Shown here in pieces: positions 269-7,169 of a stretch of 7,686 bases of DNA (positions are counted from its first letter, which is position 1; every line of letters starts with the position of its first letter). Position numbers and translations under genes: made by a program. Under the pieces are notes generated by a model. The model made no database searches and was not told the DNA's origin. It was given only the letters and a program-made list of their open reading frames with translations. The stretch spans positions 1 through 7,686 of the forward strand of contig NW_021828798.1 of the NCBI RefSeq assembly GCF_006345805.1, read 5' to 3'. The DNA is from Octopus sinensis. Lineage: Eukaryota.

Positions 269-529
269 CTGAGTTCAAATACCTATTTCTTTACTACCCA
301 CAAGGGGCTAAACTCAGAAGGGACAAACAAGGACAGACAAACGGATTAAGTCGATTATATCGACCCCAGTGTTTCACTGGTACTTAATTTATCGACCCCC
401 GAAAGGATGAAAGGCAAAGTCGGTCTCAGCAGAATTTGAACTCGGAACGTAGCGGCAGACGAAATACCGCTAAGCATTTCGCCCGGTGTACTAACGATTC
501 TGCCAGCTGGCTGCCTGAGTTCAAATACC
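269..529 (+). repeat. 15-bp target-site duplication ctgagttcaaatacc (269-283 and 515-529) flanking SINE copy A
   Basis: Perfect 15-bp direct repeat immediately on both sides of copy A. Confidence 0.9.
284..514 (-). mobile_element. Full-length tRNA-derived SINE (family 1, copy A), cephalopod-type
   Basis: Reverse complement is ~94% identical to 693-925 by manual alignment (13 differences in ~232 bp). It has an A-box-like TGGCAGAATCG and a B-box GTTCAAATTC, ends ...gtaaagaaata, and has a 15-bp TSD. Confidence 0.92.
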
Positions 530-579: not shown

Positions 580-646
580 AATCAGAAAATGGTGGTATTT
601 CAATCAGAAAATGGCGGTATTTCAATCAGAAAATGGCAGTTATTTC
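580..646 (+). repeat. Three tandem copies of a 22-bp unit aatcagaaaatggcggtatttc
   Basis: Units at 580-601, 602-623 and 624-646, each with 0-2 differences from the unit. Confidence 0.92.
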
Positions 647-675
647 TTTTGCGTCTTCCTGGGTGAGAGCCAAAC

Positions 676-942
676 GAAATAGCGCACGCGAAGGTGGCGA
701 GCTGGCAGAAACGTTAGCACGCCGGGCGAAATGCTTAGCAGTATTTCGTCTGCCGCTACGTTCCGAGTTCAAATTCTGCCAAGACCGACTTTGCCTTTCA
801 TCCTTTCGGGGGTCGATAAATTAAGTACCAGTGAAACACTGGGGTCGATATAATCGACTTAATCCGTTTGTCTGTCCTTGTTTGTCCTCTCTGTGTTTAG
901 CCCCTTGTGGGTAAGTAAAGAAATAGAAATAGCGCCCGCGAA
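676..942 (+). repeat. 17-bp target-site duplication gaaatagcgc(a/c)cgcgaa (676-692 and 926-942) flanking SINE copy B
   Basis: Direct repeat with one mismatch (686 vs 936). Only a single copy is present in the uninterrupted Y at ~5489-5505. Confidence 0.9.
693..925 (+). mobile_element. Full-length tRNA-derived SINE (family 1, copy B), cephalopod-type
   Basis: A-box-like TGGCAGAAACG at 703-713, B-box GTTCAAATTC at 767-776, a 17-bp TSD, and an inverted near-identical partner at 284-514. Confidence 0.92.
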
Positions 943-1645: not shown

Positions 1646-1663
1646 ATGATGATGATGATGATG
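1613..1663. repeat. (GAT)n microsatellite with a one-base register slip near 1646
   Basis: Direct inspection. Confidence 0.95.
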
Positions 1664-1670
1664 ACAACGA

Positions 1671-1740
1671 TACTACTACTACAGCTTCTGCTACCGTTAC
1701 CTCTGCTATTCCTACTACTTCCACTATTACTACTAAAATA

Positions 1741-1803
<63 letters not shown>

Positions 1804-1898
1804 TAGTAGTAGTAGTAGTAGTAGTAGTAGTACAGATGACACTGCTCTTGCTGCTACTACAACTACTACTACTTCTACTACTACTACTACTACTACTA

Positions 1899-1929
<31 letters not shown>

Positions 1930-1973
1930 GCTATTATAGTAAATCAATGACTACTACTACTGCTATTATAGTA
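1671..1973. repeat. Compound (CTA)n-like / (TAG)n / (CTA)n microsatellite block
   Basis: Degenerate CTA at 1671-1735, (TAG)n at ~1739-1830, (CTA)n at ~1853-1929. It ends in a 24-bp direct repeat actactactactgctattatagta (1918-1941, 1950-1973). Confidence 0.95.
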
Positions 1974-3066: not shown

Positions 3067-3075
3067 TTTTTTTTA

Positions 3076-3180
3076 AGGTAAAGTAGACCTGGGTGGAATT
3101 TGAAGTCAGAATGTAGTAATGGACGAAATACCACTGACCATTTTGTCCAGTGTGCTAATAATTCTGCCAGCTCACCACCT
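3076..3180 (-). mobile_element. Diverged 5' fragment of SINE family 1
   Basis: Aligns with many substitutions to 412-516 (gaatttgaa...gacgaaatacc...attctgccagctcaccacct). Confidence 0.8.
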
Positions 3181-5411: not shown

Positions 5412-5458
5412 GTTCTGCCAATTTGCGAGTCGTAAACGCAAAACCATGTAGCCACTTA

Positions 5459-5552
5459 CTTTTGCGTCTTCCTGGGTGAGAGCCAAACGAAATAGCGCCC
5501 GCAATAGTCCACTTTAATTTCATTTTGTACTTACACTTTTCTTATATACATC
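5459..5552 (+). repeat. Unclassified repeat 'Y', copy 2 (uninterrupted, empty-site form)
   Basis: Colinear with 646-692 plus 943-988. Confidence 0.85.
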
Positions 5553-6060: not shown

Positions 6061-6069
6061 CACAATATA

Positions 6070-6152
<83 letters not shown>

Positions 6153-6185
6153 CACATACACATACATGTATATACATGCATATAT
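6061..6185. repeat. Alternating (TA)n/(CA)n compound microsatellite
   Basis: Direct inspection. Confidence 0.93.
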
Positions 6186-6190
6186 TTTAA

Positions 6191-6265
6191 TTGCCTCGAT
6201 GACTGAAGAGATGCCGGTGCAGGTTTCTGCCCCAACATCCGAAACTCGGAGTTTTATCATGGCAA
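6191..6265 (+). ncRNA. Type I hammerhead ribozyme candidate (Penelope/retrozyme type)
   Basis: Core CUGAAGA at 6203-6209 and GAAA at 6241-6244. Stem II is GAUG/CAUC (one extra C), extended by GG/CC and GCAG-guuu-CUGC. Stem III is ACUC-g-GAGU (6244-6252). H17=U at 6253. Stem I is 6198-6202/6254-6258 (5 bp including one GU) plus UUGCC/GGCAA (6191-6195/6261-6265) across a 2x2 internal loop. Confidence 0.8.
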
Positions 6266-6358
6266 CCGAATAATTGTCCCATTTTATTTTACGAATAAAT
6301 TCCACTAGTTACATAATATCAAGGGCTCTTTTATTCTTTTGGTTTTTATTACCATTAC

Positions 6359-6361
<3 letters not shown>

Positions 6362-6396
<35 letters not shown>
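6362..6396. repeat. (TA)n microsatellite
   Basis: Direct inspection. Confidence 0.97.
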
Positions 6397-6399
<3 letters not shown>

Positions 6400-7169
6400 A
6401 AAAAATGCATTGTAAATAAAGATACGGAGGCTCTTTAATTCTTCATCCGTTATTAACCAGAATAGTAATACTCAGTTTCGTACCTTTAATGATGAGGCTG
6501 ATGGGGGCTTCCCATTTTGGCGGTGCCTGTGACGCACAAGTTTCACATGTGTAAATTTATATTAAAATCAAAATGAAGGAAGTGTTTTGAGAACTTTATC
6601 ATAGAGAAAAAGAAAAAAAGTATTTACACTTTCATCGAAACATGCTACCAGTTTCAGTCGCGTAAAATGACGATTTAGTTATGCAACAATAACGAAAAAA
6701 AATAAAAGAGATAAAACGTAAAAACGAATTAAAATAAAATGAATTAACTTAAGCTTTCATGGTATCAGTTCTGGAAGCTCACATGTTTTTCTTACAAAAA
6801 TCACATTGTGTTGTCAGTTGGTTTCCTTCTGTTTGTTGCTGGGTCGTATGTATAAATGTGTGGTGCGAAAGCGAGCGAGCTAGAGCGAGAGAGAAGTAAA
6901 AAGAAAGAGAAGTAGATAGATAGTGAGGTAGATAGATGCATAAGTTATTGTAGAACAATAAGTGACATAATATCCGTTGCTAGAGTATCACGAAAGGGTG
7001 GGGTATGTTATTCCTTCAAGTGAAACTATCTCTATGTAAGATAAGTCAGAGAGTTAAAATTCTGGCGGATGTTGGGGGAAACTGGAGATTTTTCACCGGA
7101 AGCTCTTGTTCTTGTACGTCAATAGGAGCTTGTCAATGGTGCAGTGGCAGATAGAATGATGGCGTAATT

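What the first reader, a model, noticed from the sequence alone, without database searches (positions are those of the whole stretch)
6191..6265. Nearly complete type I hammerhead ribozyme between two TA microsatellites
Seen: all conserved core elements are in the right order and register (CUGAAGA, GAAA, U-H), and all three helices can be built. Stem I has 5+5 bp, stem II is long with a GUUU tetraloop, and stem III is ACUC/GAGU with a 1-nt loop. The predicted cleavage is 3' of 6253 (GUU triplet), and AATAAA follows at 6294-6299. Established: a stem III too tight to close in a monomer is the hallmark of metazoan type I hammerheads that cleave as dimers, as in newt satellite 2 and Penelope-like elements. 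The internal loop in stem I plus the stem II loop is where type I tertiary contacts form. Inference: this is the self-cleaving motif of a small non-autonomous Penelope-like or retrozyme element, with longer helices than the typical minimal PLE form. Caveats: one extra C before GAAA, and GUU is a less efficient triplet than GUC.
Basis: partly seen in the sequence, partly recalled or inferred. Interest (0 to 1): 0.85.

Follow-up and report, generated by a model that had tools for sequence, protein, structure and literature searches.

The report
Hammerhead-derived motif in truncated Penelope-like retroelement
The hammerhead-like RNA motif is real and descends from the self-cleaving ribozymes that Penelope-like retrotransposons carry near their 3' ends, but this copy is a dead 180-bp tail fragment of such an element inserted in a TA microsatellite, and whether this divergent version still cuts RNA is untested.

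Summary
The described motif is at the stated coordinates: CUGAAGA 6203-6209, a 30-nt interrupted helix II 6210-6239, one extra C 6240, GAAA 6241-6244, ACUC-G-GAGU 6244-6252, U17 6253, and a 5+5 bp helix I. A relaxed descriptor hits only 2 of 3000 shuffled windows.

It is not a small retrozyme. Window 6182-6361 is the 3' end of a 5'-truncated Penelope-like element (PLE). Longer copies in the same 2.72-Gb animal genome run upstream into a 717-aa ORF. A homologue's fold is best matched by telomerase reverse transcriptases, and the ORF ends in a GIY-YIG-like region. The family shows a pseudo-LTR, head-to-head inverted copies, a "tail" and (TA)n flanks.

Homologous elements from other organisms carry a type-I hammerhead with an uninterrupted core, at the same 3'UTR position, with the same ACUC-N-GAGU helix III. 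So the motif is hammerhead-derived by homology.

Catalysis is unproven. No Rfam hammerhead model matches, although a core-intact relative also escapes. The extra nucleotide is present in every subfamily sampled. The youngest, most abundant subfamily has U4 changed to C. The window copy is solitary, so it has no partner in cis for the dimer its tight helix III requires.

Verdict: a real, ordinary kind of feature; a new variant of a known kind.

The parts
6065..6185 (.). Compound (AT)n/(AC)n microsatellite upstream of the insertion. It is the probable target tract.
   Evidence: TRF. PLEs of several clades insert preferentially in (TA)n (PMC8557442).
6182..6290 (+). Last ~110 nt of the PLE 3'UTR (pseudo-LTR segment). 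It contains the hammerhead-derived module.
   Evidence: It aligns to both pseudo-LTR copies of the full-length element L077. The 5' boundary at 6180-6196 is shared by most copies sampled.
6191..6202 (+). Helix I, 5' strand. Distal UUGCC is 6191-6195, the internal loop is 6196-6197, and proximal GAUGA is 6198-6202.
   Evidence: Across 87 unique copies, the proximal pairs are 96.8% standard and the distal pairs 81.8%, against 8-69% for slid controls.
6203..6209 (+). Core C3-A9, CUGAAGA.
   Evidence: Position 7 varies A/C/U between sub-lineages. U4 is C in the young subfamilies.
6210..6239 (+). Expanded helix II: 4 bp, mismatch(es), 3 bp, mismatch, 4 bp, then an R-UUU loop.
   Evidence: Compensatory pair 6220/6229: C-G 54, U-A 16, U-G 4. 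Pair 6221/6228: A.C 54, G-C 19, A-U 12.
6240..6240 (+). Extra nucleotide between helix II and G12. Alternatively C6240 pairs with G6210 and C6239 is bulged.
   Evidence: It is C or U in every subfamily sampled in this genome.
6241..6253 (+). G12 A13 A14, then helix III ACUC-G-GAGU (6244-6252), then U17 (6253). The predicted scissile bond is 6253/6254.
   Evidence: The same ACUC-N-GAGU or a perfect palindrome occurs in the relatives' hammerheads.
6254..6265 (+). Helix I, 3' strand.
6291..6361 (+). PLE 'tail'. It is the first ~70 nt of the next unit's 5'UTR, copied because reverse transcription starts inside the downstream unit. It includes AATAAA at 6294-6299.
   Evidence: It aligns only to the L077 upstream pseudo-LTR-to-5'UTR continuation, not to the L077 3' end, which stops at (TA)n. 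Many copies and most inverted partner copies end at about 6285-6297 instead.
6362..6396 (.). (TA)17.5 microsatellite at the 3' junction.
   Evidence: TRF. Other copies end in (TA)n, (CA)n or (TG)n.

Best explanation
Window 6182-6361 is a dead, 5'-truncated insertion of a Penelope-like retroelement (PLE) into a TA microsatellite.

What it contains. It comprises the last ~110 nt of the element's 3'UTR (the pseudo-LTR segment) plus a ~70-nt 'tail' copied from the start of the next unit. The hammerhead-like motif at 6191-6265 is the pseudo-LTR hammerhead module of this PLE lineage. It is homologous by position and by sequence (CUGANGA ... GAAAC-UC-N-GAGU-H) to type-I hammerheads with an uninterrupted core in related PLEs of other organisms. 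In this genome's lineage, helix II has grown from about 4 bp to a 30-nt interrupted hairpin, and there is an extra or bulged nucleotide where helix II meets G12.

Inferred mechanism in the parent element. The module is transcribed within each pseudo-LTR. Its helix III (ACUC-G-GAGU, a near-palindrome with a 1-nt loop) cannot close stably in a monomer. Two modules, from the two pseudo-LTRs or from two transcripts, would therefore pair to form a double hammerhead that cuts after GUU (6253).

My commitment on activity. I judge this activity to be weak at best in the window's subfamily, where the core is intact. I judge it lost in the youngest subfamilies, where U4 is C. There the conserved fold may persist for another reason, for instance as part of the RNA the element's reverse transcriptase handles. 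The window copy itself is solitary and non-functional.

Shown versus inferred. Shown: the anatomy, repeat-family membership, the PLE architecture, and homology to relatives' hammerheads. Inferred: dimerisation, cleavage, and any residual role.
For: 1. Dispersed repeat. Window 6186-6330 gave 1965 first-look candidates at 86-92% identity.

2. 5'-truncation ladder. Copies start at 6182 or extend about 30 to 1000 bp upstream. The longest run through a conserved 3'UTR into ORF remnants.

3. A full-length relative, L077. It has an upstream 3'UTR copy (pseudo-LTR), a 5'UTR, a 717-aa ORF, a 3'UTR with the same module, then (TA)n. Window 6291-6355 matches only the pseudo-LTR-to-5'UTR continuation, which identifies it as the tail.

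4. Reverse transcriptase. The predicted structure of the homologue P0002 (about 49% identical to the L077 ORF; pLDDT 89, pTM 0.85) is best matched by telomerase reverse transcriptases (E 1.6e-8), then by other RTs. The C-terminal Y..YVGLT..R..H pattern weakly matches the region beside Rfam-detected PLE hammerheads in this genome.

5. Insertion signature. Head-to-head inverted partner copies occur in about 12 of 30 loci and at 6 exact palindromic junctions. The 3' ends lie in microsatellites. These are the signatures described for PLEs (PMC8557442; PMC11167929).

6. Homology. ORF homologues from other organisms (about 43-47% identity) carry type-I hammerheads with an uninterrupted core at the same 3'UTR position (or in the upstream pseudo-LTR copy, as in L103). 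They have ACUC-A-GAGU, ACUCGAGU, ACUUAAGU or ACUA-C-UAGU as helix III and are followed by (TA)n or AATAAA. They are L078, L079, L100, L101, L103 and L106-108.

7. Structure. The helices are kept across 87 unique copies, with compensatory changes. Only position 7 of the core varies freely between sub-lineages of the window's subfamily.

8. Energetics. The homodimer is predicted about 8 kcal/mol more stable than two monomers, and the monomer MFE is not the hammerhead fold.

9. Precedent. Metazoan PLE hammerheads are described with a large helix II, a bulge at its base, a palindromic helix III and low in vitro activity (PMC4209133).
Against: No Rfam hammerhead model matches, either at gathering scores or at E<=10 on 181 nt. 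This weighs little, because the core-intact relative L106 also gives no hammerhead hit, and L079 reaches only 24.8 bits against the Hammerhead_3 model, below its cut-off.

The nucleotide inserted 5' of G12 is not part of the canonical core.

The youngest and most numerous subfamily (2411 exact pattern matches, ORFs still open) has CCGAAGA. U4 is a core position where substitutions strongly reduce activity in model hammerheads (established knowledge: Ruffner, Stormo and Uhlenbeck 1990). Catalysis is therefore evidently dispensable for proliferation.

No copy in the sample begins at the predicted cleavage site.

Pfam (local copy) and PDB sequence searches do not recognise the ORF. The GIY-YIG assignment therefore rests on motifs and one weak match.

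The covariation comes from related repeat copies, and most changes are transitions, some at CpG sites, so it is modest evidence.
Confidence: 0.85

Rival explanations
1. It is a fully functional self-cleaving type-I hammerhead. It works as a dimer and processes PLE or read-through transcripts at 6253/6254 in vivo. The long helix II and the bulged nucleotide are tolerated lineage-specific embellishments.
For: The core is intact in the window's subfamily and in about 1526 exact-pattern copies. Position 7 is the only freely varying core position within that subfamily. The helices are maintained with compensatory changes. The relatives' hammerheads commonly have a non-Watson-Crick U.U at the base of helix II, so an odd II/core junction is a feature of this group of related elements. 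A predicted dimer is favoured.
Against: The youngest expanding subfamily has U4 changed to C. There is an extra nucleotide next to G12. PLE minimal hammerheads show only low activity in vitro even as dimers (PMC4209133). No genomic copy in the sample starts at the cleavage site. No covariance model supports it.
Confidence: 0.3
2. It is a small non-autonomous PLE derivative or a metazoan non-LTR retrozyme: a short tandem repeat that circularises by hammerhead cleavage.
For: The unit is short (182 bp), it contains a type-I-order motif, and many copies share the sharp 5' end at about 6182.
Against: No tandem arrays were seen in the window or in about 100 loci. Copies form a continuous 5'-truncation series into a 717-aa RT-endonuclease ORF. 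The last 70 nt are the 5'UTR start of the next full unit. Retrozymes are defined as tandem repeats of about 150-450 bp (PMC7229834).
Confidence: 0.05
3. It is a chance resemblance to a hammerhead inside an unrelated SINE or MITE.
For: No Rfam hammerhead match. The fold z-score is only -1.56. A relaxed descriptor would give a few hundred chance hits genome-wide (extrapolated).
Against: There is positional and sequence homology to uninterrupted-core hammerheads in related elements of other organisms. The element has PLE architecture. No tRNA-like part was found. The inverted copies are head-to-head partner insertions, not terminal inverted repeats.
Confidence: 0.02

Closest known systems
Minimal or atypical hammerheads in the pseudo-LTRs of metazoan Penelope-like elements (Cervera and de la Pena 2014, PMC4209133; the dimer-cleaving variants of Lunse et al. 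2017 are cited from memory)
   Same: The location is the same: the pseudo-LTR or 3'UTR of an RT/GIY-YIG-type element. So are the type-I strand order, a helix II larger than in canonical animal hammerheads, an unpaired nucleotide at the base of helix II, and a short palindromic helix III that implies action as a dimer. The element shows the same 5'-truncated, inverted and microsatellite-associated insertions.
   Different: Helix II is much longer (30 nt, with two internal mismatches) than the 6-8 bp described. The unpaired nucleotide is on the 3' side (before G12) rather than between A9 and 10.1. Helix I is long (5+5 bp). The youngest subfamilies have C at position 4.
Drosophila virilis Penelope hammerhead variant (PMC4209133)
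   Same: It is an atypical PLE hammerhead that escaped descriptors because of a bulged nucleotide in helix II and other departures. It was found only by manual inspection of pseudo-LTRs.
   Different: The bulge position, the helix I length (2 bp there) and the helix III all differ.
Newt satellite 2 and Schistosoma type-I hammerheads; metazoan non-LTR retrozymes (PMC7229834)
   Same: Type-I order, and a weak helix III that requires a second copy. A U.U at the base of helix II, as in the relatives found here, is described for axolotl HHR_Amex2.
   Different: Those sit in short tandem repeats that give circular RNAs and have loop-loop tertiary contacts. This motif is in a dispersed, ORF-derived PLE fragment with no tandem array.
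Rfam Hammerhead_1 (RF00163) hits in the same genome
   Same: The core spelling is the same (CUGAAGAG ... CGAAAC) and AATAAA lies downstream. These hits appear to belong to another PLE lineage: GTACCTGAAGAGACCCAGAAYGGGTCGAAACATGTGTCGTAC, scoring up to 48 bits.
   Different: Those have a 5-bp helix II, helix III as ACAUGU, a 4-bp helix I and no inserted nucleotide. The window motif scores below E=10 with every hammerhead model.

Membership tests
Hammerhead ribozyme, type I | Conserved core CUGANGA ... GAAA ... U-H in type-I strand order | tested here: met
   CUGAAGA is 6203-6209, GAAA is 6241-6244, U16.1 is 6252 and U17 is 6253.
Hammerhead ribozyme, type I | Helix II abuts A9 and G12 with no inserted nucleotide (the 10.1-11.1 pair lies next to G12) | tested here: not met
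   There is one extra nucleotide: C6240, or a bulged C6239 if G6210 pairs with C6240. It is C or U in all subfamilies sampled. The relatives have U.U at this junction.
Hammerhead ribozyme, type I | Three helices supported by sequence variation | tested here: inconclusive
   Standard pairs make up 74-97% of cells, against 8-69% in slid controls. Compensatory changes occur at 6220/6229, 6221/6228, 6198/6258 and 6215/6234. However, the sequences are related repeat copies and the changes are mostly transitions.
Hammerhead ribozyme, type I | Match to a curated covariance model (RF00163 gathering score 34 bits, or other hammerhead models) | tested here: not met
   No hammerhead family matches at gathering scores or at E<=10. 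As controls, the core-intact relative L106 also gives none, and L079 gives 24.8 bits against the RF00008 model.
Hammerhead ribozyme, type I | Homology to recognised hammerheads at the same place in related elements | tested here: met
   L078, L079, L100, L101, L103 and L106-108 all carry one.
Hammerhead ribozyme, type I | Site-specific Mg2+-dependent self-cleavage | not testable with these tools
   This needs in vitro transcription and cleavage assays.
Penelope-like element (PLE) | Telomerase-like reverse transcriptase | tested here: met
   The predicted structure is of homologue P0002, about 49% identical to the 717-aa ORF of L077, and has pLDDT 89. Its top fold matches are TERTs (E 1.6e-8), then other RTs. 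Pfam and PDB sequence searches were negative.
Penelope-like element (PLE) | GIY-YIG endonuclease domain | tested here: inconclusive
   The C-terminal pattern IIYEA..KKYVGLTEGNFK.RFNNH is GIY-YIG-like by eye. One weak tblastn match (39.5% over 43 aa, E 2e-4) falls beside Rfam-detected PLE hammerheads. Pfam gives no hit.
Penelope-like element (PLE) | Pseudo-LTR (partial tandem), 5' truncation, an adjacent inverted copy, and a tail | tested here: met
   The pseudo-LTR and tail are seen in L077. The descriptions come from PMC8557442 and PMC11167929.
Penelope-like element (PLE) | Insertion bias for (TA)n or other microsatellites (known for some clades) | tested here: met
   The window copy lies between two arrays. 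Other copies and the relatives end in (TA)n, (CA)n or (TG)n.
Metazoan non-LTR retrozyme | Short tandem repeats (about 150-450 bp), each with a hammerhead, and no coding capacity | tested here: not met
   The window holds a single copy. The copies are dispersed and continuous with an RT-endonuclease ORF. The definition is from PMC7229834.
Metazoan non-LTR retrozyme | Expressed as small circular RNAs | not testable with these tools
   No RNA data were available.

The most novel reading that the evidence does not exclude
The lineage-specific module (30-nt interrupted helix II, an unpaired nucleotide 5' of G12, and GUU) is still an active double hammerhead. More radically, the C4 version in the young, still-proliferating subfamily also cleaves, or has been co-opted as a structured recognition element for the element's reverse transcriptase. 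That would make this family a natural series recording how a transposon ribozyme is remodelled or retired.
Probability: 0.12. Interest if true: 0.6.

Novelty: new variant of a known kind. Interest (0 to 1): 0.35.

Why it matters
Hammerheads in Penelope-like elements are known, and their role is unresolved. This family gives a within-genome series. An older subfamily has an intact core. Abundant young subfamilies still have open reading frames but have lost U4. All keep the same fold. That series directly addresses whether PLE proliferation needs ribozyme catalysis or only the RNA structure. It also shows that curated covariance models miss this class of PLE hammerhead: even core-intact relatives go undetected. 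Repeat annotation of such genomes therefore under-counts them.

Tried and rejected
- **Rfam.** A scan of the whole window and a permissive scan of 6150-6330 gave no hammerhead. The only hits were spurious miRNA-like matches to TA/CA repeats.
- **tRNA-derived SINE.** ARAGORN found nothing.
- **MITE.** The inverted copies are head-to-head partner insertions meeting at the element's 5' end, not terminal inverted repeats.
- **Retrozyme or tandem array.** None was found.
- **Pfam on the ORF and on homologues.** No significant family in the local copy. The precomputed weak or faint tags were DUF8422 and HTH_animal only.
- **PDB sequence and profile searches.** Nothing found. The fold search was needed to show the RT.
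- **Rfam on six related loci at E<=1.** This was swamped by palindromic (TA)n hairpins matching miRNA models.
- **Naming the organism.** A literature search did not confirm this, so the identification stays unverified.

Full report
**1. The observation**

- Helix I is UUGCC-UC-GAUGA (6191-6202) paired with UUAUC-AU-GGCAA (6254-6265): 5 + 5 bp around a 2x2 internal loop.
- The core CUGAAGA is 6203-6209.
- Helix II is a 30-nt hairpin (6210-6239) with a GUUU loop and three mismatched positions in this copy.
- One extra C sits at 6240.
- GAAA is 6241-6244.
- Helix III is ACUC/GAGU around a single G (6244-6252).
- U17 is 6253, and AATAAA is 6294-6299.
- The flanks are a compound (AT)n/(AC)n array at 6065-6185 and (TA)17.5 at 6362-6396.

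A relaxed type-I descriptor that I wrote finds only this site in the window. It hits 2 of 3000 dinucleotide-preserving shuffles.

No Rfam family matches the window at gathering scores, and no hammerhead model matches 6150-6330 even at E<=10. The minimum-free-energy fold of 6186-6270 keeps helix I and the tip of helix II but not the hammerhead junction, with z = -1.56.

**2. The motif sits in a dispersed repeat**

The window belongs to a 2.72-Gb, 13,516-contig genome, evidently an animal. Its size and one scaffold length match, from memory, the Octopus sinensis assembly. I could not verify this.

Window 6186-6330 has 1965 first-look candidates at 86-92% identity. In 30 fetched loci the repeat unit is 6182-6363. 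Its 3' end runs into (TA)n, (CA)n or (TG)n.

Many copies start within a few bases of 6182. Others extend upstream by about 30, 60, 90, 120, 200, 355 or more than 420 bp. About 12 of the 30 loci hold a second, inverted partial copy (6182 to about 6285-6297), head-to-head with the first. Six loci have exact palindromic junctions.

**3. The repeat is the 3' end of a Penelope-like element**

Searching with the upstream 151 bp brought in 30 longer copies. The longest reach about 1 kb further, through a conserved TG/TA-rich stretch, into remnants of an ORF C-terminus reading IIYEATV..KKYVGLTEGNFK.RFNNH...C.LC.

That 110-aa segment has more than 15,000 first-look candidates in the genome. Open frames reach 717 aa, and many hits form head-to-head pairs.

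One such copy, L077, is a full unit of a sister subfamily. In order it has: (TA)n, a 3'UTR copy (pseudo-LTR), a 5'UTR, a 717-aa ORF, the 3'UTR, and (TA)n.

Window 6186-6290 aligns to both of L077's 3'UTR copies. Window 6291-6355 aligns only where L077's upstream copy continues into its 5'UTR. The last ~70 nt of the window unit are therefore the PLE "tail", the start of the next unit. This is the signature explained by internal initiation of reverse transcription (PMC11167929).

5' truncation, partial tandems forming pseudo-LTRs, an adjacent inverted copy, tails, and a bias for (TA)n are together the published PLE insertion signature (PMC8557442).

Pfam and PDB sequence searches do not recognise the ORF. 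A structure predicted for the homologue P0002, about 49% identical to the L077 ORF, from a 30-sequence alignment (pLDDT 89.4, pTM 0.85) is best matched by telomerase reverse transcriptases (3du5, E 1.6e-8). Prokaryotic, LINE-1 and group II intron RTs follow. That fits PLE RTs, which are the sister group of telomerase RTs.

The endonuclease assignment rests on motif spelling and one weak tblastn match beside an Rfam-detected PLE hammerhead in the same genome.

**4. The motif is hammerhead-derived by homology**

Homologous ORFs (about 43-52% identity in the hit table; about 43-47% for the loci used below) occur in many other assemblies. I fetched the DNA around ten of them. Eight loci, from six of the proteins, carry at the same position a type-I hammerhead with an uninterrupted core. 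That position is tens of nt after the stop codon and tens of nt before (TA)n or AATAAA.

| Locus | Hammerhead sequence |
|---|---|
| L079 | UUCUGU CUGACGA GCGC-UUAG-GCGC GAAAC UCAGAGU A ACAGA |
| L078, L100, L101 | CUGA(C/U)GA U CGC(C)..(G)GCG U GAAAC with UCAGAGU, UCGAGU or UUAAGU, then A |
| L103 (in the upstream pseudo-LTR copy, 5' of the ORF) | ...GAAAC UCAGAGU U (a GUU triplet, as here) |
| L106-108 | CUGAAGA U CGCC..GGCG U GAAAC UACUAGU C GUGC AAUAAA |

Helix III is a palindrome or a 4-bp stem with a 1-nt loop in all of them, as it is in the window (ACUC-G-GAGU). Several relatives have U.U where helix II meets the core, so an irregular junction is a trait of this group of related elements.

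Rfam also misses these relatives. L106 gives no hammerhead hit at E<=10. L079 gets 24.8 bits against the type III model and 14.9 bits against RAGATH-1. The negative Rfam result for the window is therefore weak evidence.

The genome does hold hammerheads that pass Rfam's cut-off, apparently from another PLE lineage. They read GUACCUGAAGAGACCC..GGGUCGAAACAUGUGUCGUAC followed by AAUAAA, and score up to 48 bits.

**5. Variation within the genome**

From 20 further 3'UTRs and the earlier loci I distinguish several subfamilies.
- **S1, the window's subfamily:** GAUAA CUGAAGAG AUGCCGGUGCAGGUUUCCGCCCCGACAU C CGAAAC UCGGAG UUUUAUUAUGGCAA.
- **S2:** CUGAAGAG AUGGUGGUGUGGAUUUCCACCUCGGCAU C CGAAAC UCAGAG.
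- **S3-S5:** CCGAAGAG ... C (C/U)GAAAC UCAGAG.

Exact pattern counts are 1526 for the U4 form and 2411 for the C4 form, with zero for the reversed-pattern controls. The C4 copies are nearly identical to each other and include ORFs still open over 717 aa, so they are the youngest.

The extra nucleotide before GAAA is present in every subfamily sampled.

Across 87 unique copies the proposed pairs are standard in the following proportions, against 8-69% when the 3' partners are slid by 1-3 columns:

| Helix | Standard pairs |
|---|---|
| Helix I, proximal | 96.8% |
| Helix I, distal | 81.8% |
| Helix II | 73.9% |
| Helix III | 97.4% |

Pair-type counts at the covarying positions:

| Pair | Counts |
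|---|---|
| 6220/6229 | C-G 54, U-A 16, U-G 4 |
| 6221/6228 | A.C 54, G-C 19, A-U 12 |
| 6198/6258 | G-U 47, G-C 26, A-U 7 |
| 6215/6234 | C-G 58, U-G 17, U-A 4 |

Within S1, position 7 is the only core position that differs between sub-lineages (A, C or U), as the hammerhead rule allows. These are related repeat copies and most changes are transitions, so I treat the covariation as supportive, not decisive.

**6. Is it catalytic?**

This cannot be decided here.

*For:*
- The core is intact in S1 and S2.
- The helices are maintained.
- The irregular helix II/core junction is shared with the relatives.
- A predicted homodimer is about 8 kcal/mol more stable than two monomers (-51.5 against 2 x -21.7). 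The monomer's hammerhead-like fold (-17.7) is less stable than its MFE. That is what a dimer-type hammerhead looks like.

*Against:*
- A nucleotide is inserted next to G12.
- U4 has become C in the lineages that proliferated most recently, so catalysis is dispensable for transposition. The same argument has been made from hammerhead-less Naiad PLEs (PMC8557442).
- Metazoan PLE hammerheads have low activity even as dimers (PMC4209133).
- No copy in my sample begins at the predicted cleavage site. Instead, 5' ends cluster at 6180-6196, just outside helix I. That cluster may mark a pseudo-LTR transcription start, an RT stop or a snap-back point. This last point is inference.

The window copy is a lone 180-bp fragment and has no partner in cis.

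I put about 0.3-0.35 on detectable cleavage by S1- or S2-type dimers in vitro.

**7. Comparison with known systems, and verdict**

The closest known systems are the atypical hammerheads of metazoan PLE pseudo-LTRs. The differences are the 30-nt interrupted helix II, the 3'-side unpaired nucleotide, the long helix I, and C4 in the young subfamilies.

It is not a retrozyme. There are no tandem arrays, and the copies are continuous with an ORF (PMC7229834).

The feature is a new variant of a known kind, of moderate interest. Its main value is as a natural series bearing on whether PLEs need their hammerheads.

Noticed in passing
window 6397-6540; L075 (reverse complement) ~9505-9630: The ~140 bp that follow the 3' (TA)n in the window are homologous to the sequence following the (TA)n of an unrelated copy. 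The local alignment score is 85, against 26 +/- 4 for shuffles. The (TA)n tract may itself belong to another repeat family that serves as a preferred target.
   Followed up: partly
G000 C5:61734300-61738800 (L077), and the places listed: A young, very homogeneous PLE subfamily exists. It has 2411 exact matches of its hammerhead-homologous module and ORFs open over up to 717 aa. Many copies are in head-to-head pairs 1-3 kb apart. Its core reads CCGAAGA instead of CUGANGA. It has probably been active recently.
   Followed up: partly
G000, e.g. C13:29988995-29989039 (L031) and L032-L042: Hammerhead_1 hits at or above the Rfam cut-off (8 of them, up to 48 bits) come from what appears to be a different PLE lineage. 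They read GTACCTGAAGAGACCCAGAAYGGGTCGAAACATGTGTCGTAC followed directly by AATAAA. Several ~105-nt hits have a large insertion in helix II.
   Followed up: partly
L043-L076, about 200-550 bp upstream of the module (e.g. L075 reverse complement 8850-9200): The 3'UTR of the window's subfamily contains a ~350-bp TG/TA/CG-rich low-complexity stretch. It is conserved in sequence between copies, so it is not a free-running microsatellite. The young subfamily lacks it; its 3'UTR is only ~280 nt.
   Followed up: no
window 295-516 and 692-913; also 3075-3180: A 222-nt inverted repeat, 95% complementary, has 175 nt between its arms. A third, 74-75% similar copy lies at 3075-3180. This is another repeat family, and the same sequence is present in several fetched loci.
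   Followed up: no
window 1660-1970: A (TAG)n tract faces a (CTA)n tract, forming an imperfect long palindrome of trinucleotide repeats. The arms at 1766-1832 and 1870-1936 are 96% complementary.
   Followed up: no
L079 1449-1490; L102 3740-3960: In the other organisms' loci, further hammerheads of another spelling (CUGAUGAG UGAG-GCAA-CUCA CGAAAC AG..) lie next to the elements. In L102, two element ends with hammerheads face each other across a (TA)n tract. Rfam scores this as a spurious miRNA hairpin.
   Followed up: no
window 643-689 / 5456-5502 and 942-988 / 5506-5552: Two short direct repeats (47 nt each, 96% and 87% identical) lie about 4.6-4.8 kb apart. The two segments are adjacent at the downstream site.
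   Followed up: no
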